DNA of 61,706 nucleotides, the filler included, from Hausera hauseri (Eukaryota): NCBI GenBank assembly GCA_046269625.1. It is 13 parts of 13 records of this genome, joined end to end, with 100 filler letters (N's around TTAATTAATTAA, not from the genome) between each part and the next. Parts side by side here need not be neighbours in the genome. Positions count along the whole stretch, not along the records: positions 48,390 to 52,741 come from JBJURY010621553.1; 12 more parts are not named here. The stretch is one strand, 5' to 3'. Both the position numbers and the translations under genes were made by a program. Below are positions 20,226-52,741 of this stretch, in pieces. The notes beneath the pieces were generated by a model. The model saw only the letters and a program-made list of their open reading frames with translations. It was not told the DNA's origin and made no database searches. Within the stretch, counting starts at the first letter, position 1, and each line of letters begins with the position of its first letter.

Positions 20226-21059
20226 TAAAATTGTTCACTAAAAGCTTCCACTTGTTGTTCGTACAGGGATCTAATTTATTCTGACCTTAAGCGTTACCTA
20301 ACATATAAAATTTCTGAGTCTCTCTGAAGGCGAGTTCGGTGGTGGTCAGGCTACAAGTAGCCTGCACCTGGCAATTTCCAGAACGTTTAACGATTAGATA
20401 CATGACAGGTAATGTTGAGTCCTGATACATCTTAAAGTCCGTAATATCTATCAAACCATACGTCAAGTTTATTTCAATGAATCTGATGCAATCAAAATGA
20501 ACGAAAAACATCTTAAAGTCCTTTTATATAATAATTACAACAACCACATTACGAGCGCTGTTTCATATCCTTAGTACATTTTGAATTACCTAATCGCGAA
20601 TTCCTCAAATGTGATTATATGTGTATTCATTATATATATGCATATATATGTAATTAAAAATATATCTTCCTTCACACTGCGATAGTATATCGATATACCA
20701 TGCAATCTATCATAACATTTAGTTCTAATATTAAAAGTATGCATGACGTTCCTGATGTTAATTGTTATTGTACTTCTCCAAATCATTCTACTTACTTCAT
20801 CGGTAATATACCCATCATTTTAATGGTCAACAAATCTTTATTAATATTCGTGGATCTTATTTGACCAATAATAAGGAAACCTTAACAATATCATTAACAA
20901 TTTTATTATTCAAATAAAAGCAATAGATTAGTACAGTTTTTATTTAAATATTATCAATAATATATTATGAATAGAATAGGAGAAACAAAATGATCGAATT
21001 ATCACTACTAATCAATATTATAGAAAGAAATAATTTAATTTATCGTTAATTTGTCTTAA

Positions 21060-22100
21060 TTGTGTTCTCTAATGATATCCAATGTACTCCTATACGTTAA
21101 TTTCTGTAAGGTTTTGTTAACCTGAACTGTTAAACGTGCATTAACCTCCTGTTCTCTGATTTCATCTAATCAACATTAACTAACATATTACAATACTCAA
21201 TTGTTATCGTTTCTATCATCTGGTTAAATTTACCGACGTCTTGCTTATCTATTTATAAATCGTTCGTCTCCTATTTGACTTCTTAGCGATATCATCGTGT
21301 ACATTGGCATAACCTTCATTTATTTCAACCATCCTGAAATATGAACTCAACCGCATTCTAGTTCCTCGTTTGTAATTCAATTTGAATACTTTGATCATAA
21401 CTAAAAAGCTCTAAAATTATAAGAGGAATCGGCAGTTTAAATCAAAGATTTATAAAATTCCAGTCGTCATTATTTATATATCCATTGCCGCTACTTTCAT
21501 TTTCATCCGACAGCAAGAATATTCACCATAGACTCGGGGAAAAATAATATAATAAACAATTTTATTATACAAATAAAAAGAATAGAACGATATATAGTTT
21601 TGTAACTAACATCAATATCATAATTAGGGTAGAATGAATATAACGATACTGCAATATCGAAATCATCAATATTAATACAATAAAAGGGTATAATTTCAAC
21701 ATCAAAATTATCAATATTATAGGGAGAAATTCTCTGATTTGCCAGAAAAATCATTTCAGTTGTGATCTCTAATAATGTCCGATACACTCATAGGTGTTAA
21801 AACATCCGGGTCTCTAGTTTGATCTGATCCACGTATTATAATGCTCAATTATTATACCCAACATTTTACTGACATCTTGCCAATCATATCCATAAAGTAT
21901 TTAGTCCATAAATGGCTTCTTAACTACATCATTAGGTATAGTGGTATAACCTTACTGACAATGTGACTGACTCAACGTAAATTTAATTGCAATCCTGTTA
22001 CTTATACATAATGCTATTTTAATCCTAACCATGGAATTCTACGAATATGGAAGGCATCGGTAGTTTGGATTAATCTATACAATTCTCCATCATTGAGTAT
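21060..22100 (-). repeat. Diverged tandem duplication (period about 630-700 bp) of a decayed coding-like unit
   Basis: 21061 TGTGTTCTCTAATGATATCCAATGTACTC vs 21761 TGTGATCTCTAATAATGTCCGATACACTC. Also TTTACCGACGTCTTGC vs TTTACTGACATCTTGC, and GAATCGGCAGTTT vs GCATCGGTAGTTT. Confidence 0.6.
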
Positions 22101-23439
22101 TATTATAATACCATTTGGCATAATAGTTGCACTTACTTTCTGCCATTACAAAATGATAATAGATTACGATTCATGCTCCCAACAAAATTAGCTTTGATTT
22201 CATCAATGTCGCTTATATTAATCATACTGGATTGTTTGATCTAAGTACGAATATTATATTATTCGTTATCTCTCATTAGTTATTGTGGGACTAATCGGCC
22301 TTTGTGTGAATACAGTCTGCATTTATGCGTCTTTGCATAGACATATGTACATTATCATCCAATATATGTTCATCTGTTTACAAAATCACACCAACGTATT
22401 TGTGTACGTCAATAATCTGTAAATCAGATCATAGATATGATTCACGCATTTATAAGTTTCTAACTATATATTTTTATCACAAATTAATACAATAATGACA
22501 ATGGTATATTACTGGCAGTAACAATGGAAATAAAGACGTGATAGATTTTTAACAAACTAAACTCTAAGTTATTCAATCTCTATTAGGTCAAAACCATCAT
22601 GTTTAAAACTACCTGTTGAATCATTGGCGAATTCCGATGAAACTGTCGTCGTATCATTACCGTTGTTTATGGCTTGATTTTTGATTAAACTGAGATAATT
22701 TATTAATGCTTGGTAAAAGTCTCCCTTCGAAATGACAGACTTACTTAGAACCTTTCAGTACAATGATAACCTGTCAATTGCAGCTCGACTCGATGAATAG
22801 AAGAGTAACTTTCTGGATCTGAATTTAATTCAGTTAATTACTTTGGCCAATGCCAAAAGACTTACTTGTCTTTTCAAACACCTGATGAGTTGAATTAGAA
22901 TCAAAAATAACTTACTGTGTGTTGTGTTGCAATGCATCTTATTTATATACTGGTCTTTGAACTTTATAATGTAATTTCAGAATTCTATTATTCATTGTTA
23001 AAAGCATTAATGGTCTATTCTGTTCTTAGCGGCATCTTTCATTTTCAGAATTGAAATGAATTTTGAAAACCTTAGTAGACCACTTATCTTGTCAGTTTTG
23101 TCATTTCAACAATCTACTTTACATTCCATTGTCAACTCATTGTTACATTTGACCTAACAATCTTTTATATTTGACCTAAATTTGACCTAACAATTTATTT
23201 TGCATTTAATCTATATCTCATATTTACAACTTTATTCACAATCCCTACTCCTATCAATTGCCAATCGATCAGTGTTGGATTGGTTAACAATCTTTTACAA
23301 AAACAGTGGGGATGTTAAAATATGACACCCATAATCAATTGGGTTTACAGGATAATGAGAAAGAAATAAGAATAATAATTTCAGCATGATAATGTCTTTG
23401 AAATGTTTAATCAAATAACATACATGAACAATATCAAAA

Positions 23440-23550
23440 TGTTATCAAATGTCACATAAATAATGCCAGAATGTTATCACAAATAATGTCACAATGTTAA
23501 ATGTCATCAGAATATTATCACATGAATAATGTCACAATGTTAAATGTCAG
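23440..23550. repeat. Short tandem AATGTCAC/AATGTTA repeats
   Basis: AATAATGTCACAATGTTAAATGTCA occurs twice, plus degenerate units. Confidence 0.7.
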
Positions 23551-23610
23551 TTGATTGGCGAAGTATATTCGAGTTTCATCGAGCATCAGGACATTGGGTA
23601 ATGTTCAATC

Positions 23611-24243
23611 TTAAGAACCTCCAACATTTTTCCCCATTTTGAAAAAGATTCGGTCCTCCGGATCACTCTGGGTACTGACATCAACGAAGCTGAGATTGCG
23701 GAGTCTAATAATCAATGTCGCATCGTTTATCGGGTTCATCCAATGGCATAATCCCTGGGTTCGGTTGTCGTAGGTATAGGAGAAGTGGTAGTAGACTAAT
23801 GGTTGACGGCAGTAATGGCATGATATACCGTTCTGAAATGTCATTTGGAGTGCATCATTTGGATCAATTGATTGTAGAAATTGGGATCGGAGTTTGTTGA
23901 AACATGTTGCACACAGAGTGTGGTTACATTGGAATTGAACTACTGTTATTCTTTCGGTAAGGCAAATTGTACATTCATAAGTAGGAAGCTGATCATAAAA
24001 GAGAATTTGCAATGTTGCCCAAAGATCAGGTAAAGCTAGGTCAGAAATAAGATCAACTCGGCATTTACTAAGTACAGGAAACCAATCTTGTTGCAATGAT
24101 ATTGGCAATGGAGGACTATGAGATATAGTTGGTGTAGGAGTTATTGAAGGTGAAGGTACGGGTAATTCAGATAGTGGTCTAATGACACTTTCAGGATGAT
24201 AACGTGAATGGGGTATTGAAGATGGCTGTTCTAAAAGAGACAT
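23611..24243 (-). CDS. Intronless C3HC4 RING-finger protein (putative E3 ligase), 210 aa
   Basis: CTIC-x11-CNHTLCATC-long insert-CHYCRQP, a Pro/Ser-rich N-terminus, and ATG to stop intact. Confidence 0.8.
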   Translation of the reverse strand: MSLLEQPSSIPHSRYHPESVIRPLSELPVPSPSITPTPTISHSPPLPISLQQDWFPVLSKCRVDLISDLALPDLWATLQILFYDQLPTYECTICLTERITVVQFQCNHTLCATCFNKLRSQFLQSIDPNDALQMTFQNGISCHYCRQPLVYYHFSYTYDNRTQGLCHWMNPINDATLIIRLRNLSFVDVSTQSDPEDRIFFKMGKNVGGS

Positions 24244-26295
24244 AATGTTTATATGTTGTAAAGATACTTTGTATANNNNNNNNNNNNNNNNNNNNNNNNN
24301 NNNNNNNNNNNNNNNNNNNTTAATTAATTAANNNNNNNNNNNNNNNNNNNNNNNNNNNNNNNNNNNNNNNNNNNNTCACGTAATTTAGATACAATACAAG
24401 CATAAGTAGACATCAAAACGCAATTCCAAGCTTTACAACGACTAAATTTTATGATGACGAAGCAAGTGACGACGATACTGAAAGAGATTTATAAAATGAT
24501 CGAAGAAACGATCTTTAGAACAAAGCGGAATATGACTCGCGCTTTCTGTCCAAGATTAAGAAACATCCGACTAGAAAGAGTCCAACATTTAACAGATAAA
24601 GCTATCGACGAAATTTTAATGCAGGATATCGAAACCCTAGACATTTGTCCGAAACATAGAGGAACTTTAGCGGAAGCAATAAAATTCTTGCATAAACCAC
24701 AAGAATGGGTGGCCGGAACAGATCAGAATTGCCATACCGAGTTAACAAAAATAAGAAACGACCAACATATTAGTTTCGAAGAATCTAAGTTCGTAAAGAA
24801 ATTGCTGGATGCAATAGATCCCGATTCGAAAGCCATAAATGAGATGTATGAATTAGCCTTCCTATTAGTAGAAATGACACAGATTAATGATAAAAAGACG
24901 AGGCAATTGATGCCCAACTACGACAAGTCGAAGAAACGTGCGTTAGAACCAAACAAATGACAACGAGGTTAGACGAATTAGTAAAAGGGTTCGAAATCTA
25001 TCGGAACAAATATGCTGTTACCGAATCAGAAATTAAAAATAAGCAAGAATTTGTACAAAGATGACAAAGAAATGTAATTATTGAACTGACTGATTATCAC
25101 CAAAAGGGATTCATCAATTCTAATGAATTAGACAAATTACCAAAAATGATTCAGTATGCTTGTGGGAACGGAATAGGATTCTGGACCACACAGATGAAAG
25201 AAATACAGCCAAGGTTAAAAAAAATTTGAAAGAATGTACAAAGGACGAATACAGCACTAGTAGACTATGGACTTCCAGATGTTGAAAATGAACCGGAATA
25301 AGATGCGCACTTAGATGCGATAACGGCCAAAAATCCTGTATCTCCAGTACACCTAAATGAAATAGAAAGGTGTTCGCAGAACAGGAGATTCAATGTGGAG
25401 ATGCTCCTTAATTCAGCTCTAAATGAAAAAGATTTAATTGAACTAATTAATGTAAACATTACCGAAAGTAAGTTAAGACAACATATTCCGACTTTGACTA
25501 AATTATCCAGTAAGAGCACAGTTTATAGTACGGTGCCGTAACTTTTGACAAGGAAATGCGCTAAAATCTTGAGGGCTAACCCTAAAGTATTGATGAAAGT
25601 AATGGTATGCCAAGACGGTACAGTGTGTAAGACAAATCATGGGAGTCCGAGATGCTGCAATGTATTTCGAGTATTTACAAACAGGTGAGGACAAGGAACA
25701 ATACGACAAGAATTTAGTGCCACTGAGTGAAAGAATAACCAATGTTCCAAGGCCGAAACGCCCAGTCGGTAGGCCTAAGAAAACGCGAGAAGAAGTCGAC
25801 TACAATGGAGAATTGATTAGAGAGTTGAGACAAATGTCGATTCCTACTTTCAGCACAGACAATGAAGAATTAAGCGAATTAATGAAGAATTTGTTACGAA
25901 TTGTAAATTATTCAAGCCTTCGAGGTGACACGTTAAATGATAAAGAAAAAGCAATATTCAATGCAGCTAGAATGATGAAAAGTTCACGTTTTAAACTACC
26001 AAAAAGTAACTTAACCGATGAATCGGTAATCGAGAAGATCATGGTGGAAAACACCACTGAATAATTAACAAAAGTATTACTATACTTAGCTATCAAAATA
26101 AACCCTAATCAAGAAAATGAAATTAATAGAGTTAGAAGCTTAGCACAAACAGCAGCAAGACAGCTACCCTGCGAAGTAAATTAATCGAGACTATTTTATA
26201 AAGAAGACAAACGACCCGGAAATACCAATAGGCTGAAAGATATGTTATGTAATTTGGTAACAACCGATAATAATAACCGGAAAATCGAATCAAGT

Positions 26296-48389: not shown

Positions 48390-49167
48390 AAAAATCTTGG
48401 CTGATACTAATCGTAATTGGACGTCCATTCTACCATTTGTTCTACTAGGTTGGCGCAACACACCTTCGACCACTACCGGTTGCGCTCCAGCCGAAGCACT
48501 CTTTGGGACTCCAATTAGGGCCTTATTTGAGCTTTCTGATCTCGACGACAATCCTGCAGACGAAAACATTCGTGCGGCACAATCTCACTTCGTCGAGGTC
48601 AGCTCAGATTCATTCTGCCGCCTCTTTAATAACAACAAATCCTACATTCCGAAGGATTTATACTCCGCCAAGTTTGTGTGGTTAAAAGATCAATCTCCTT
48701 CTGGTTTTAGACCTCAATATGTTGGCCCGTACAAACTGCTGAATCTTTCATCTCACACAGCAACAATCTTACACCAAGAAAAACCGTACAACGTCCACAT
48801 TTCGAATCTGAAGCCTGCCTTTTTCATTCACGACATTCAAGATAACAATTATACATTCAATTCAGACTCACCTAGTAATTCCACTGACTTTTTAAATGAT
48901 TTTGCGTCGGTGCAGCAATCACTACTTGATTACACTCAATCATCATCATTTCCTCCATCCATCTCACTTCACTCTCCGTCATCATGCTCACAACCTTCAT
49001 CTTCTTTCTTGCTTGACTCATTTTCGCTACCACCCCAGTCACAAAATATCACACAACAGCCCAGCGTAAATCCATCGAGTAAGGTACGTAGAGTGACACT
49101 CAATACGTACAGCAGAGAAAAGCTCTTTGATGGCACACAACGCCTGACCCGTACTAAAACTGATTAG
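48390..49167 (+). mobile_element. CsRn1-like integrase C-terminus (same family as 14058-19304)
   Basis: WTSILPFVLLGWRNTP, PQYVGPYKLL, VHISNLKPAF and a Ser-rich tail. Confidence 0.92.
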
Positions 49168-49258: not shown

Positions 49259-49658
49259 AAGGGGGGGGAAGTGAAGTGGTGCCGCGGCCGTGGGCGTGCT
49301 TGTCTCCTCGCCGGATTTGCAAATTATCACAATTCAAAGCGGACACAATTCAATCAATTGGAATGAAACTATGCTGATCGTCAAACGTTGCGAACACAAT
49401 TCGGTCGATTGAAAATATTGGAATGAAATTATAATTGCCAGTGAATAGACTTTCAAAGACAATATTCTGTATATATGTATATATTCATATGATGTATATC
49501 AAGAAAATATAAATATTAAATATTGATAAATAATTTGTAATTGTGATTTCAATACAATTTAAGCTTTTAGATTTATTCATTATCTTTTTACATCGCCTGG
49601 ATTACTTTATCGTTGGATTTATTTATCTAATTAAACAAGACCCATATTGGTGTCAGAA
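49259..49658 (+). repeat. PPT, LTR-like segment and tRNA-Leu-type primer-binding site
   Basis: AAGGGGGGGGAAG, then TGAAGTG at 49272. ..CCCA at 49644, followed by TGGTGTCAGAA (49648-49658). Confidence 0.65.
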
Positions 49659-49789
49659 TAAAACTAAAACCAACAGCTATTGTATTTAAAATATCCGAAT
49701 TTCATTCTTCTTCTATAAACATTACTTATTTTTGAAGTATGGAAAAATGCCGAGTCTTATCTCAATTAAATTTATTAGAAAAATATACA

Positions 49790-50668
49790 TCTGACAGAAG
49801 TGCATTCAAAACAAAAGACGATGAAAGAGTTACATAAAAAATTTTGACTGCAATAAAAGGAAACGAACGCATTTATCGGAATATCATCGTCAAAAATCCG
49901 AGTTATGTAGATGCTCTAATAAACACACTTCAGGGAATAGTCGATCCAGCCATCACGTACAATGCTATGAAAATTATAAATGAACTAGTTGCAAAACAAA
50001 ACGCTCAGAAAAAAGACCAAATTCTAGTCTACCATTGTGCAACAAAAGCGCTCTTGCAATGCATCTATTTGAAGTCAAGAGAACAAAATCCAAGTGAGGA
50101 CTACATGTTCCTTCTTCATCAAGTACTATACCGAGTTGAAATCAAAGATAAAATAATCGGAGTCCGAGCCAGATTGTGTCAATGTCTAAACGTTATTGTA
50201 AATTTACTGAGTATCCATGTAAATCTCATTCCAAAAAATCGAATTGCAACTGGCGGGATGACCATCGTTTCTCAGCTAAGTAAAACTATTATCAATATTT
50301 TACAGATTCTTCGACTCTATTGCCGTAATTTGATTAATGCATCTCGTCTGGGTCGTATTGGTGTTGTAACTTTTTTGCTAAAGATGATCTCCTGTTGCGG
50401 AAAGAGCAATTTAAACATTTTAAGGATCACCTTGGATTGTTTATATCTATATGTTCGAACTAAGAGTAATTCACAAAGAGCACTTAATCAAGGAGCTATG
50501 TCAATGTTATTAGATTTATATTTGGACTGGAACAAAGGAGAGAGCAAAGAGAAGCAAATCGCTGGACGGAAGTTCATGTTAGGCATCATAAAGCACTCAA
50601 TTAATTTGAGAAGCGGGAAAAAAGCTTTTTTTTCGAAGCCGACGGACTACAAATACTACATGCGTTCT
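49790..50668 (+). pseudogene. AGTPBP1: Cytosolic carboxypeptidase 1 (Nna1/CCP1) N-terminal armadillo-like fragment, intronless
   Basis: KDKIIGVRAR, NASRLGRIGVV, KSNSQRALNQG..LLDLYLDW and GKKAFF(EADGLQIL) match the recalled CCP1 pattern. Frameshift in a T8 run near 50630. Confidence 0.8.
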
Positions 50669-50670
50669 GA

Positions 50671-50937
50671 GATGCCTTTGTCAAACCGGGATTACCGATG
50701 AAAAATGCATTAGACAGAGTCACAAAAACATCGGATGTTGAATTTATTCAAAATGATGTACGATTATATGGCAATGCTGCAATGAATATGGGAATAAAAT
50801 ATCCGATGAATTTGTATCATTTCATTACAACTTTATTAGAAAAGGACATTAACCATGAAGTCGTCAGGGATGTTATGAAGAACTTTCAATATTACAATTT
50901 GTTTATGGATGAAAGTGCAGATACGATACTGGATTTC
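50671..50937 (+). pseudogene. HYOU1: Hsp70-family HYOU1/GRP170 N-terminal fragment
   Basis: AFVKPGLPMKNALDR..RLYGNAAMNMGIKYP..LLEK vs recalled AIVKPGVPMEIVLNK..RFFGDSAASMAIKNP..LLGK. Confidence 0.72.
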
Positions 50938-50939
50938 AC

Positions 50940-51460
50940 TAATATAACACCAATGAAATCAATGTTTAAACTTCGAAAATCAAAGACATTCAATCGACCA
51001 TCAATTTTTTATAAAGCATTTATTAATTCTAAGGAAAAATTTGTTCTGTTTCGAAGGCTTTCAGGACTTGTTTTACAATCTACCAACGATAAGAATTTTT
51101 TGGAAAAGTTTCGTAAAATTAAGCATCCTTGTTTGATATCAGTAAATCAAGTTTTTGTCACCGAAGAGTTTGATGACCACTCTACTATTTTTATTACCGA
51201 TTATTATCCATATCACTGTACAATTTTGCAAACGTATCTCAGTAATGTTGGAAAGTTAATTGGATTTTCGTCTCGGTTTAATTTGAGTCAACAAGCTCGT
51301 CCATACAGTTCAAAAAAACCGTCTAATCTGAACATGTTACTTGAGGATAAAACTTGGTACTACTTTATTCAAATAATCAATATTAATTCAAATAATGACT
51401 TTCCATCAAACATTCTTTGTTCCCCGAAATACAATTATAAAACCAATCATCGGGTTGTTC
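50940..51460 (+). pseudogene. PAN3: PAN3 pseudokinase fragment, in frame with the HYOU1 fragment
   Basis: FYKA..LFRRLSG..FRKIKHPCLISVNQVFVTEEFDDHSTIFITDYYP..ARPYS..LLEDKTWYYFIQI. Confidence 0.78.
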
Positions 51461-51700
51461 TTATAAATCAAATACTCAATTGGGCTGTTAGATCTGGATA
51501 TTTTAATCAATATCAGTATCGTAACCGTCAGGCATATAAACGTCGCGACAATTTGAGGCCGAGAATAAGGAATAGATTTGAGTGTGTTAAAAATGGTTTG
51601 GCTGTAAATTGCAGACCAAATGGATGGTGTAGTAATTATTGCGTAAAAATGCAGAACTGGTGATTTTTACAATGAGCGCAATACGAAAAATAACTTTACA

Positions 51701-52741
51701 ATGTTCAATCCAATGTGTGTACTTTTTGCAAAATTAGATTTCATGTACGCCCTTAATATTATAACTGAGCACTACCATCCCTATATGAATCGGTTTAACT
51801 TTCTGCTCTCTGGTTTGTCGGGATCTATATCGTTAGAAGTTAGAACCAAATTTCAATTTAATTTTTATAATGATCTGTACGAAATTACAACAACTGAACA
51901 TAAACAAAAGTGTCGTCGTTATTTTAAATTTTTTCAATCACAAATATTCAAGGGTAATAACAATCTCATCCTGTTCAACTTTACGGACATTCTCAATTCG
52001 TCTATAATTGGTCCATTTGAAATAGAAATGTCACCGTCATTTCCGACTCCATCGAAACAATTGCGACCAAAGTCAAGTCCTACGTCACTTAAGTCTTATA
52101 ACAATCATCCTACCGTTAGACAGTGTTCGAGGAACTCAACTCCGACAACTTATTGCTTGACCAGTCCCGACGAAATAACAAAAGGTAATTGTGACAGTTT
52201 TTCGTACATTCAATCATTTAAATACTCGTTGCCCGACATTTATGCTTCAGCTTTTGGCGAATCATTTTTAATTATTAAACTATCATCTGGTTATATTGAA
52301 TTTCACGAAATCGACTTTCAAACTGGTGAAACCGACTGCCGTTTCAACCTACACAGTCACATTGCATCGGTTTTTCAATTGTCCATCTCTCAAAAATCAT
52401 GTTTCATAGCCAGTGGCTACATCAACGATTGGATTAATGCTTTGCACATCAAAGATAGCTGCCTTTTGATCCACCGTTCACATTTATACAAAATTATGAT
52501 GATTGTATCAATTTGTGAATTTAATTTGCAACCTACCATTTTAAAACCAAAATCGCAATTCGCATCTAGTTTGAAATTACCGCTTACAATGTATCGAAGT
52601 ACTGGTCGTCCTACGACGATGGTCACTCATACAAGGGATTCTCTGGTTGAGGGACCGAGCATGTCCGCCCCCGCTGCGCCGCGTCACTTATCCCTGTTAA
52701 TTTTTTTTAATAACACGCACATCAATACCTTTTATGCTCCA
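51701..52741 (+). pseudogene. Mosaic-looking ORF including a single WD40-like segment
   Basis: SSGYIEFHEID..LHSHIASVFQLSISQKSCFIASG, with abrupt compositional changes. Sources not identified. Confidence 0.4.

What the first reader, a model, noticed from the sequence alone, without database searches (positions are those of the whole stretch)
49648..52741. Intronless mosaic of unrelated host-gene fragments (AGTPBP1-HYOU1-PAN3-WD40-like) behind an LTR and primer-binding site
Seen: after PPT, LTR-like DNA and a TGGTGTCAGAA PBS, pieces of at least three unrelated conserved genes follow with no spacer. All are on the sense strand and lack introns. HYOU1 and PAN3 are joined in one open frame, and the CCP1 end is in that same frame after the T8 slip (one TGA at the joint). 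Inference: a non-autonomous LTR element that serially captures mRNA fragments by template switching, acting as an exon-shuffling vehicle or a source of small RNAs against host genes.
Basis: partly seen in the sequence, partly recalled or inferred. Interest (0 to 1): 0.85.

Follow-up and report, generated by a model that had tools for sequence, protein, structure and literature searches.

The report
Gene-fragment mosaic inside LTR retroelement
Behind a genuine retrotransposon LTR and tRNA-Leu primer site lies an intron-free, same-strand patchwork holding pieces of at least two unrelated host genes (CCP1 and PAN3), a reverse-transcription chimera of a kind already described in flies, mice and plants.

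Summary
The core observation holds, but only in part. An integrase C-terminus, a polypurine tract, a 373-bp TG...CA LTR and a primer-binding site lie in canonical order. The primer-binding site matches the published tRNA-Leu site of Steamer elements at 11 of 12 bases. Downstream, on the same strand, sits an uninterrupted CCP1/AGTPBP1 N-terminal fragment (Pfam E 2.7e-52) and a PAN3 pseudokinase N-lobe fragment (PDB E 1.3e-12).

The "HYOU1" piece got no support from any tool. The "WD40-like" piece is a 365-codon open frame with no hit among 1.84 billion representative proteins, only weak beta-propeller leads.

Three open runs of 287, 330 and 365 codons far exceed shuffles. The breaks are two in-frame stops and two frame changes, the first at a T8 run and the second near an A5 run.

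Public contigs show several diverged copies. They also show a shorter form, present in two coded organisms, that joins 50008 to 51751 in frame.

Best reading: a chimeric retrocopy made by reverse-transcriptase template switching inside a Ty3/gypsy-type element, probably re-copied as a non-autonomous element. This mechanism is published (Tan et al. 2016), so this is a new member of a known kind. Parental introns, junction microsimilarity, a 3' LTR, read support and any small-RNA role remain untested.

The parts
48397..49167 (+). C-terminal part of a retroelement integrase ORF (cut by the piece's edge), with a GPY/F-like motif and a Ser/Pro-rich tail. It is very highly repeated.
   Evidence: ORF. 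There is a weak but colinear match to PFV integrase residues 244-378 (E 0.14). Summed contig depth is above 20,000 with 54-70 distinct contigs at variant sites, against about 21 in the least repeated part. The GPY/F reading comes from established knowledge of Ty3/gypsy integrases. Pfam gave no hit.
49259..49271 (+). Polypurine tract AAGGGGGGGGAAG directly before the LTR.
   Evidence: Sequence. An organism-B contig with a different upstream (...CCACGGGGG) joins the window exactly at 49272 (table 7). This places the LTR start.
49272..49644 (+). LTR of 373 bp, TG...CA. It has a GC-rich start, an AT-rich TATA-like middle and imperfect 51-60-bp internal direct repeats (49339-49432).
   Evidence: (families D2, D3). 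Summed depth is about 170 over 49266-49557 but only about 35 from 49558 on, so the 3' limit rests on the CA plus primer-binding site, not on depth.
49648..49659 (+). Primer-binding site TGGTGTCAGAAT, of tRNA-Leu type, 3 nt after the LTR's CA.
   Evidence: It is unique in the piece, with 0.0018 expected. It matches 11 of 12 bases of the Steamer primer-binding site TGGTGTCAGAAG, described as complementary to the 3' end of sea-urchin tRNA-Leu (PMC8905726). The first 9 nt also match the human tRNA-Leu(CAG) probe in PMC3413118.
49660..49738 (+). Leader without any ATG. The first ATG after the primer-binding site is 49739.
49739..50667 (+). CCP1/AGTPBP1 N-terminal (TPR/ARM-like) fragment, uninterrupted. 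Its lesions are a TAA at 49835-49837, a frame change at the T8 run 50626-50633, and a TGA at 50668-50670 at the joint.
   Evidence: Pfam PF25571 E 2.7e-52, protein aa 4-266 matching profile positions 34-278 of 310, which is nt 49853-50641. The extension to the ATG and beyond the T8 run is inference: the spacing fits the profile, but the short pieces gave no Pfam hit. T-run length differs among contigs (table 4).
50671..50937 (+). Its identity is not verified.
   Evidence: No hit in Pfam, PDB, the Atlas or the region-restricted search. The resemblance to the HYOU1 N-terminus is recollection only.
50938..51385 (+). PAN3 pseudokinase N-lobe fragment, uninterrupted.
   Evidence: PDB 4bwp (Drosophila PAN3) E 1.3e-12. 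Also 4cyi, 4bwx, 4bwk and 9qtu (human PAN3, residues 429-571), all within query aa 81-227. An organism-B contig of 441 nt matches only 51199-51385, so it leaves the window where PAN3 homology ends (table 8).
51386..51663 (+). Tail of the 330-codon frame, origin unknown. It carries a borderline phosphomannomutase-like stretch at about 51502-51648.
   Evidence: PDB 7myv E 0.048. Pfam was blank. This is a lead only.
51647..52623 (+). Orphan open frame (365 codons to the piece's edge). It overlaps the end of the previous frame near an A5 run (51645-51649). A weak WD40/beta-propeller-like stretch lies at about 52208-52438. This is the most repeated part of the tract.
   Evidence: 0 hits in 1.84 billion representatives. 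PDB was blank. Pfam WD40_CDC20-Fz scored E 0.1-0.24. Atlas leads are all below 0.9 and all beta-propeller. Summed depth is 216-1050.
52624..52741 (.). Start of a different, high-copy repeat at the piece's end. It is not the LTR.
   Evidence: Summed depth is 4378. It shows no real similarity to the LTR start and no direct repeat of the LTR.
50008..51751 (+). Alternative joint seen in public contigs. 50008 is joined to 51751 with 5 other letters between, skipping 1742 nt. The joint keeps the CCP1 frame in register with the orphan frame.
   Evidence: tables 5 and 5c: organism A, 1 contig at depth 68.5; organism B, 2 contigs with 95 letters on the shorter side.

Best explanation
The tract 49648-52623 is the internal region of a chimeric, non-autonomous LTR retroelement.

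How it formed (inferred): during reverse transcription inside a virus-like particle of a Ty3/gypsy-type element that uses a tRNA-Leu primer, the reverse transcriptase switched repeatedly between the element's RNA and co-packaged host mRNAs. It copied a CCP1 5' piece, a PAN3 middle piece and two to three further pieces of unproven origin, then switched back to the element's leader next to the primer-binding site. The gag-pol region was thereby replaced by an intron-free, sense-strand mosaic.

How it spread (inferred): the locus kept the LTR and primer-binding site, so it could be re-copied in trans by autonomous relatives. This gave several diverged copies and a shorter in-frame deletion derivative.

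Current state: this copy is decaying, with two in-frame stops and two frame changes, the first at a T8 run and the second near an A5 run. It most likely has no organismal function.

Shown: the integrase, polypurine tract, LTR and primer-binding site in order; the CCP1 and PAN3 identity; their colinearity and strand; the long open frames; the multiple variant contigs; the alternative joint.

Inferred: template switching, mRNA origin, trans-mobilisation and lack of function.
For: - Canonical order of integrase C-terminus, polypurine tract, TG...CA LTR and primer-binding site. The primer-binding site equals 11 of 12 bases of the published Steamer tRNA-Leu site.
- The LTR start is fixed independently by an organism-B contig that carries another polypurine-tract context.
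- CCP1 E 2.7e-52 and PAN3 E 1.3e-12. Both alignments are uninterrupted, both are on the LTR's sense strand, and they lie within 300 nt of each other.
- There are no poly(A) remnants at the joints. The only runs of 7 or more are T8 at 50626, A7 at 51312 (inside the PAN3 alignment) and T8 at 52701.
- The first ATG after the primer-binding site is the one that opens the CCP1 piece.
- Four to five distinct contigs at 85-95% identity cover parts of the PAN3 stretch. Depth is uneven along the tract. A 1742-nt-shorter joint form is present in two coded organisms.
- The mechanism and its products are documented in animals: multi-gene chimeras, a four-gene 'Super' retrocopy, filler letters at joints, and loci acting as non-autonomous elements (PMC5131818).
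Against: - No 3' LTR or second polypurine tract lies in the piece, so a complete element is not shown.
- The LTR is shared with an upstream integrase. This needs a tandem arrangement or a mis-join.
- Summed depth falls from about 170 to about 35 at roughly 49558, which is 90 nt before the inferred LTR end.
- Parental genes could not be reached, so intron loss and junction microsimilarity are untested.
- Only two of about five segments are identified.
- The largest and most repeated segment has no known relative and need not be host-derived.
- The contig data are short unitigs, possibly from the same sample as the assembly. Summed depth is not a copy number.
- No junction-spanning record could be inspected.
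Confidence: 0.6

Rival explanations
1. Assembly artefact. The 373-bp LTR, or one of the fragment joints, is a false join between different loci, so the integrase-LTR-primer-site-mosaic order, or the mosaic itself, does not exist in one molecule.
For: The LTR is a repeat, and an integrase-polypurine tract-LTR-primer site order is unusual for a single element. Both frame changes fall at or beside homopolymer runs (T8 and A5) whose lengths differ among contigs (table 4), which is typical of long-read consensus errors. No listed contig spans the whole stretch.
Against: All 30 bins are covered in run X1, and 65% of sampled 31-mers are held. Depth is fairly even (77-97) across the 'HYOU1'-PAN3-tail stretch, which suggests these travel together. 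The frames are continuous across the joints. A related joint form recurs in a second organism. Homopolymer errors would affect frames but not the mosaic order.
Confidence: 0.12
2. DNA-level patchwork. The fragments were brought together by a DNA transposon (Helitron, Pack-MULE-like), by filler-DNA repair or by segmental duplication. The LTR element merely landed upstream, or recombined there.
For: Parental intron positions are unknown. The most repeated part (51748-52623) and the high-copy end (52624-52741) are not LTR-like. No 3' LTR was seen.
Against: A tRNA-Leu primer-binding site 3 nt after the LTR marks the tract as the internal region of an LTR element, not flanking DNA. About 790 nt of CCP1 and 440 nt of PAN3 coding sequence are uninterrupted, which would be unusual for genomic DNA of an intron-rich animal (inference). 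No terminal inverted repeats were found. All segments share the LTR's orientation.
Confidence: 0.1
3. A selected, translated chimeric gene. The mosaic is kept open because its fusion protein, or its translation as such (for example to escape nonsense-mediated decay of the element's RNA), matters.
For: Open runs of 287, 330 and 365 codons compare with a shuffle maximum of 199. The joints are in frame, including the independent deletion joint 50008/51751. The first ATG after the primer-binding site opens the CCP1 piece. The frame breaks fall at or beside runs whose length varies between contigs. Tan et al. report frequent in-frame products.
Against: There are two in-frame stops (49835, 50668) in this copy. 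Only 5 of the 14 listed substitutions in the tract are synonymous, which is close to neutral. The fragments are truncated domains: half a pseudokinase and a TPR array without its peptidase. No RNA data were available. In-frame joints have a chance of only about 1/3 each, so this is weak statistics.
Confidence: 0.1

Closest known systems
LTR-mediated chimeric retrocopies of animals (Tan et al. 2016, PMC5131818), including CG4799_CG11924_r in Drosophila and the mouse 'Super' retrocopy of four genes plus an Alu
   Same: Partial mRNA copies of unrelated genes are joined without spacer inside an LTR retrotransposon, on the sense strand and often in frame. De novo filler letters occur at some joints. 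The loci can behave as non-autonomous LTR elements and be re-copied.
   Different: Here only the 5' LTR side is seen, and the microsimilarity that defines the mechanism is untested. The mosaic starts within about 90 nt of the primer-binding site, so essentially all of gag-pol is replaced. The tract is older, with diverged copies and a form shared by two organisms. Its largest segment has no identifiable parent.
Plant LTR retrotransposons carrying host gene fragments (maize Bs1 and the gene-fragment-bearing LTR elements of maize and rice). Cited in PMC5131818 (Elrouby and Bureau 2010) and in PMC2774510; the details are from my own knowledge.
   Same: A non-autonomous LTR element whose internal region is a patchwork of several host gene pieces, amplified to low copy number.
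   Different: A different kingdom and different element lineages. Membership is not a meaningful question; this is an analogy of mechanism.
Steamer and Steamer-like Ty3/gypsy elements of bivalves and other aquatic animals (PMC8905726)
   Same: A 12-bp tRNA-Leu primer-binding site matching at 11 of 12 bases, a polypurine tract before the 3' LTR, and an LTR ending near a TTAAACA-like motif (ATTAAACA at 49629-49636).
   Different: The LTR is 373 bp against about 177-187 bp. The primer-binding site follows the CA after 3 nt rather than immediately, and it lies 11 nt after the TTAAACA-like motif. No RT or gag was available for phylogeny. Steamer elements are autonomous and are not reported to carry host genes in the paper read.
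Acutely transforming retroviruses (host oncogene transduction by read-through and template switching). Established knowledge; cited in PMC5131818.
   Same: Replacement of viral coding sequence by spliced host mRNA sequence through reverse-transcriptase template switching, and dependence on a helper for replication.
   Different: Here there are several unrelated, truncated, non-oncogene fragments. This is an endogenous retrotransposon and not an infectious virus. No evidence of function exists.
Pack-MULEs and Helitron gene capture (PMC8277862; PMC4067079)
   Same: Mosaics of fragments of several host genes inside a mobile element.
   Different: Those capture genomic DNA with introns and have TIR or hairpin ends. 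Here the fragments are uninterrupted, and the tract sits behind an LTR and a primer-binding site.

Membership tests
LTR-mediated chimeric retrocopy (sensu Tan et al. 2016) | Contains mRNA-derived (intron-free) copies of host genes | tested here: inconclusive
   CCP1 and PAN3 align colinearly without interruption.
LTR-mediated chimeric retrocopy (sensu Tan et al. 2016) | Flanked on both sides by discontinuous LTR-retrotransposon sequence, with both LTRs present | tested here: inconclusive
   The 5' side is met: LTR plus primer-binding site. The 3' side lies beyond the piece, and no LTR repeat occurs within it.
LTR-mediated chimeric retrocopy (sensu Tan et al. 2016) | Microsimilarity or short de novo filler at the switch points | not testable with these tools
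   This needs parental mRNA sequences. Only the derived joint 50008/51751 shows a 5-letter filler (table 5c).
LTR-mediated chimeric retrocopy (sensu Tan et al. 2016) | No L1-type hallmarks (poly(A) tail at the 3' end of each copy) | tested here: met
   No A-run of 7 or more lies at any inferred joint.
Non-autonomous LTR retrotransposon | LTR, primer-binding site and polypurine tract retained; no own RT or integrase in the internal region | tested here: inconclusive
   The LTR and primer-binding site are present. The 3 kb behind them hold no pol or gag domain. The element's own polypurine tract and 3' LTR were not seen.
Non-autonomous LTR retrotransposon | Dispersed multiple copies with target-site duplications | tested here: inconclusive
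   Several diverged contigs and a deletion form occur in two organisms. Their genomic positions and target-site duplications cannot be seen from unitigs, and summed depth is not a copy number.
Ty3/gypsy (Metaviridae), Steamer-like group | tRNA-Leu primer-binding site TGGTGTCAGAAG after the 5' LTR | tested here: met
   11 of 12 bases are identical. The paper itself notes 1-2 substitutions in the last three bases among copies.
Ty3/gypsy (Metaviridae), Steamer-like group | RT/RNase H/integrase phylogeny within the group; LTR of about 180 bp starting with TGTAACA | tested here: not met
   The LTR is 373 bp and starts TGAAGTG. RT is not in the piece. The integrase C-terminus gives only a weak PFV match. 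I therefore do not file it as Steamer, only as an LTR element using the same primer type.
Helitron or Pack-MULE capture | TIRs or a 5'-TC...CTRR-3' hairpin end; captured DNA keeps introns | tested here: not met
   No terminal inverted repeats were found. The fragments are uninterrupted. The ends of the tract are not both in the piece, so this is not fully excluded.

The most novel reading that the evidence does not exclude
A family of trans-mobilised LTR elements whose whole coding region has been replaced by a translatable, in-frame fusion of host-gene fragments (CCP1 N-terminus, PAN3 N-lobe and an orphan, possibly beta-propeller part). The reading frame would be kept open by selection, as hinted by the in-frame joints, which include an independently derived deletion form shared by two organisms. 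Selection could act because translation protects the element's RNA, or because the fusion acts as a decoy for host tubulin-deglutamylation or deadenylation machinery.
Probability: 0.08. Interest if true: 0.65.

Novelty: new member of a known kind. Interest (0 to 1): 0.36.

Why it matters
If the junctions are real, this is a clear animal example of serial mRNA capture by an LTR retroelement. It holds at least two, and perhaps five, fragments. It has persisted, diversified and spawned a shorter derivative. Such loci show how retroelement reverse transcriptases shuffle coding pieces and can seed chimeric genes.

The mechanism is already documented in flies, mosquito, fish, chicken, mouse, yeast and plants. 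The value here is therefore as an additional, fairly elaborate case, possibly in a lineage where it has not been described. It is not a new principle.

The orphan 365-codon frame, repeated more than the rest, is the one piece that remains truly unexplained.

Tried and rejected
HYOU1 identity:
- Pfam at E<=10, PDB phmmer at E<=10, the ESM Atlas and the search for homologous proteins restricted to residues 1-90 were all blank.

WD40 and the identity of the last frame:
- The HMMER search of 1.84 billion representatives gave 0 hits.
- PDB was blank for the whole frame and for two parts.
- Pfam gave only E 0.1-0.24.
- Atlas scores were below 0.9.
- The single-sequence AlphaFold2 model had pLDDT 30, so no fold search was run.

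Other copies or parents at the protein level:
- The search for homologous proteins with the 321-aa frame and with the CCP1 frame was blank in both cases. The tool's length window excludes full-length parents.

Other checks that led nowhere:
- Phosphomannomutase-like stretch: PDB E 0.048, not backed by Pfam or by the adjoining piece. I keep it as a lead only.
- Short pieces on either side of the CCP1 lesions gave no Pfam hit.
- A 3' LTR in the piece was rejected.
- Rfam gave only a chance-level SNORD115 match, E 0.57.
- Alternative genetic code (in-frame TAA and TGA read as sense) was rejected. ORF ends use TAG and TGA as well, and both frame changes are indels.
- Tiny introns at the frame changes were rejected, because the CCP1 profile alignment is colinear up to the T-run.

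Full report
**Scope.** Pieces on either side of stops and frame changes were always searched apart.

**1. The retroelement context is real.**
- The piece opens inside a 256-codon ORF (48397-49167). Its first 144 residues align colinearly, though weakly (E 0.14), with residues 244-378 of foamy-virus integrase. That is the end of the catalytic core plus the C-terminal domain.
- The ORF carries a GPY/F-like motif (…YVGPYKLL…HISNLKP…). From established knowledge this motif is typical of Ty3/gypsy integrases. Pfam finds nothing, because the core domain is cut off by the piece's edge.
- In public contigs of the best-holding run, this stretch has a summed depth above 20,000, with 54-70 distinct contigs at variant sites. 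The least repeated part of the piece has about 21. It therefore belongs to a very abundant repeat.
- After the stop come a polypurine tract (AAGGGGGGGGAAG, 49259-49271) and a TG…CA stretch of 373 bp (49272-49644). Three bases later comes TGGTGTCAGAAT.
- The 11-mer TGGTGTCAGAA occurs once in the piece, where composition predicts 0.0018 occurrences.
- It equals 11 of 12 bases of the primer-binding site published for Steamer elements. That site is described as complementary to the 3' end of sea-urchin tRNA-Leu, with substitutions noted in the last three bases among copies (PMC8905726). Its first nine bases also match a human tRNA-Leu(CAG) probe (PMC3413118).
- The LTR's 5' limit is fixed independently. 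A contig of a second coded organism carries a different polypurine context (…CCACGGGGG) and joins the window exactly at 49272 (table 7).
- The 3' limit is less secure. Summed depth falls from about 170 to about 35 near 49558, about 90 nt before the CA. This happens in a 22% G+C stretch.

**2. What lies behind the primer-binding site.**
- On the + strand there are three open runs of 287, 330 and 365 codons. The mean longest run in 300 dinucleotide-preserving shuffles, over all six frames, is 99, and the overall maximum is 199. The minus strand has nothing comparable.
- The first run is an N-terminal CCP1/AGTPBP1 fragment. Pfam PF25571 (CCP1-like N-terminal TPR repeats) scores E 2.7e-52, with residues 4-266 matching profile positions 34-278 of 310. 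That is nt 49853-50641 without interruption.
- The 38 codons between the first ATG after the primer-binding site (49739, the only ATG since 49648) and 49853 fit the 33 missing profile positions. The fragment therefore probably starts at or near the parental start codon. This is inference, because the short piece alone gives no Pfam hit.
- The CCP1 fragment carries an in-frame TAA at 49835 and a frame change at a T8 run (50626-50633). After that run the reading continues in the frame of the next ORF, up to a TGA at 50668.
- The second run (50671-51663) contains a PAN3 pseudokinase N-lobe fragment. The best match is Drosophila PAN3 4bwp at E 1.3e-12. Three fungal PAN3 chains and human PAN3 (9qtu, residues 429-571) also match, all within query residues 81-227, which is nt 50938-51378.
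- A 441-nt contig of the second organism matches only 51199-51385. It parts from the window just where PAN3 homology ends (table 8). This supports a junction there.

**3. What could not be confirmed.**
I recall a resemblance to the N-terminus of HYOU1/GRP170 (a VKPG-PM … G--A--M-IK-P pattern). That is a recollection, not a test, and I did not type remembered sequence into a tool.
- The tail of the same frame (51386-51663) gives one borderline match to a phosphomannomutase (7myv, E 0.048). Pfam and the adjoining piece do not back it.
- The third run (51647 to the edge, 365 codons) has no hit at E<=0.001 among 1.84 billion representative proteins and none in PDB.
- Its 'WD40-like' label rests on a Pfam CDC20-WD40 score of E 0.1-0.24 and on Atlas neighbours that all score below 0.9. 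All ten of the best family-bearing neighbours were beta-propellers, but the tool warns that a third of shuffled proteins get that result too.
- A single-sequence AlphaFold2 model was worthless (pLDDT 30).
- The change from the second to the third frame lies in a 17-nt overlap next to an A5 run (51645-49).
- No 3' LTR lies in the piece. The last 118 bases belong to another, much more abundant repeat (depth 4378).

**4. Copies elsewhere.**
- Two public runs hold parts of the tract. They are coded organism A (65% of sampled words, possibly the source sample) and organism B (11%). Both are kept only as short contigs, and neither is on record as RNA.
- All 30 bins are covered in A.
- The middle of the CCP1 fragment (50142-50579) is covered at depth 21-26, including one 344-nt contig with a single difference.
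- The 'HYOU1'-PAN3-tail stretch lies at an even 77-97, with 4-5 distinct contigs at variant sites and contigs of about 90% identity.
- The orphan frame lies at 216-1050.
- Summed depth is not a copy number, as the tool states. Still, the several diverged contigs show that parts of the tract exist more than once.
- One joint form is notable. 50008 is joined to 51751 with five other letters between, skipping 1742 nt. It is seen in A (depth 68.5) and in two contigs of B with 95 letters on the shorter side (tables 5, 5c).
- CCP1 homology runs straight across 50008 in the window. The shorter form must therefore be the derived one.
- By codon phase, the shorter form keeps the CCP1 frame in register with the orphan frame.
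- Run lengths at the T8 run and next to the A5 run differ among contigs (table 4). The two frame changes may therefore not be common to all copies, or they may be consensus errors.
- Of the 14 listed substitutions inside the tract, 5 are synonymous. That is too few sites, and too close to neutral, to argue for constraint.

**5. Interpretation.**
- The anatomy is LTR, then a tRNA primer site, then an ATG-free leader, then uninterrupted sense-strand pieces of unrelated genes abutting without spacer or poly(A).
- This matches the published model of LTR-mediated retroposition. In that model reverse transcriptase switches between the element's RNA and co-packaged mRNAs at short similarities. It produces partial and multi-gene chimeras, sometimes with filler letters. 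The resulting loci are co-transcribed from the LTR and can be re-copied as pseudo-LTR elements.
- Tan et al. 2016 describe a two-gene chimera in Drosophila and a mouse 'Super' retrocopy of four genes plus an Alu (PMC5131818).
- I take this as the best explanation, with confidence about 0.6.
- The integrase-polypurine tract-LTR-primer site order means the LTR is shared by two internal regions. That implies a tandem arrangement, from LTR-LTR recombination or from two copies of the same chimeric element that kept an integrase tail, or else a false join in the LTR.
- Rivals are an assembly artefact (about 0.12), a DNA-level patchwork or other transposon (about 0.10) and a selected, translated fusion gene (about 0.10).

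**6. Verdict.**
The LTR, primer-binding site, CCP1, PAN3 and the frame layout hold. HYOU1 and WD40 do not.
- This is a new member of a known kind, of moderate interest.
- The one truly open item is the repeated orphan frame.

Noticed in passing
window 48390-48827: The integrase-coding stretch reaches a summed contig depth of 21,000-25,000 with up to 70 distinct contigs. The least repeated part of the piece has about 21. This retroelement family must therefore be extremely abundant in organism A, and it is also present in organism B. Depth steps down in stages (about 3,000 from 48828, about 600 after the stop codon, about 170 in the LTR), as expected if many subfamilies share the integrase core.
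   Followed up: partly
window 49339-49432: There are imperfect direct repeats of 51-60 bp inside the LTR's presumed U3 (families D2 and D3). Contigs of both organisms show 'goes back 42-47' joints at 49368. The number of these repeat units therefore varies among LTR copies.
   Followed up: no
window 52624-52741: A different high-copy repeat (summed depth 4378) starts here, with a GC-rich head followed by a T8 run. It is unrelated to the LTR. The orphan frame runs on into it, probably by chance.
   Followed up: partly
window 51502-51648: There is a borderline similarity to phosphomannomutase (PDB 7myv residues 146-196, E 0.048), including a C-P-GW…C pattern. It could be a further captured fragment. 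Pfam does not back it.
   Followed up: partly
window 49629-49636: ATTAAACA lies 11 nt before the primer-binding site. It resembles the TTAAACA/ATAAACA motif reported at the 3' end of Steamer LTRs (PMC8905726), although there the primer-binding site follows immediately.
   Followed up: no
window 49850-50008: This 160-nt start of the CCP1 fragment has four to five times the summed depth of its neighbours on either side (160 against 34 and 39). The abundant shorter form therefore has a different or strongly diverged sequence upstream of about 49850.
   Followed up: no
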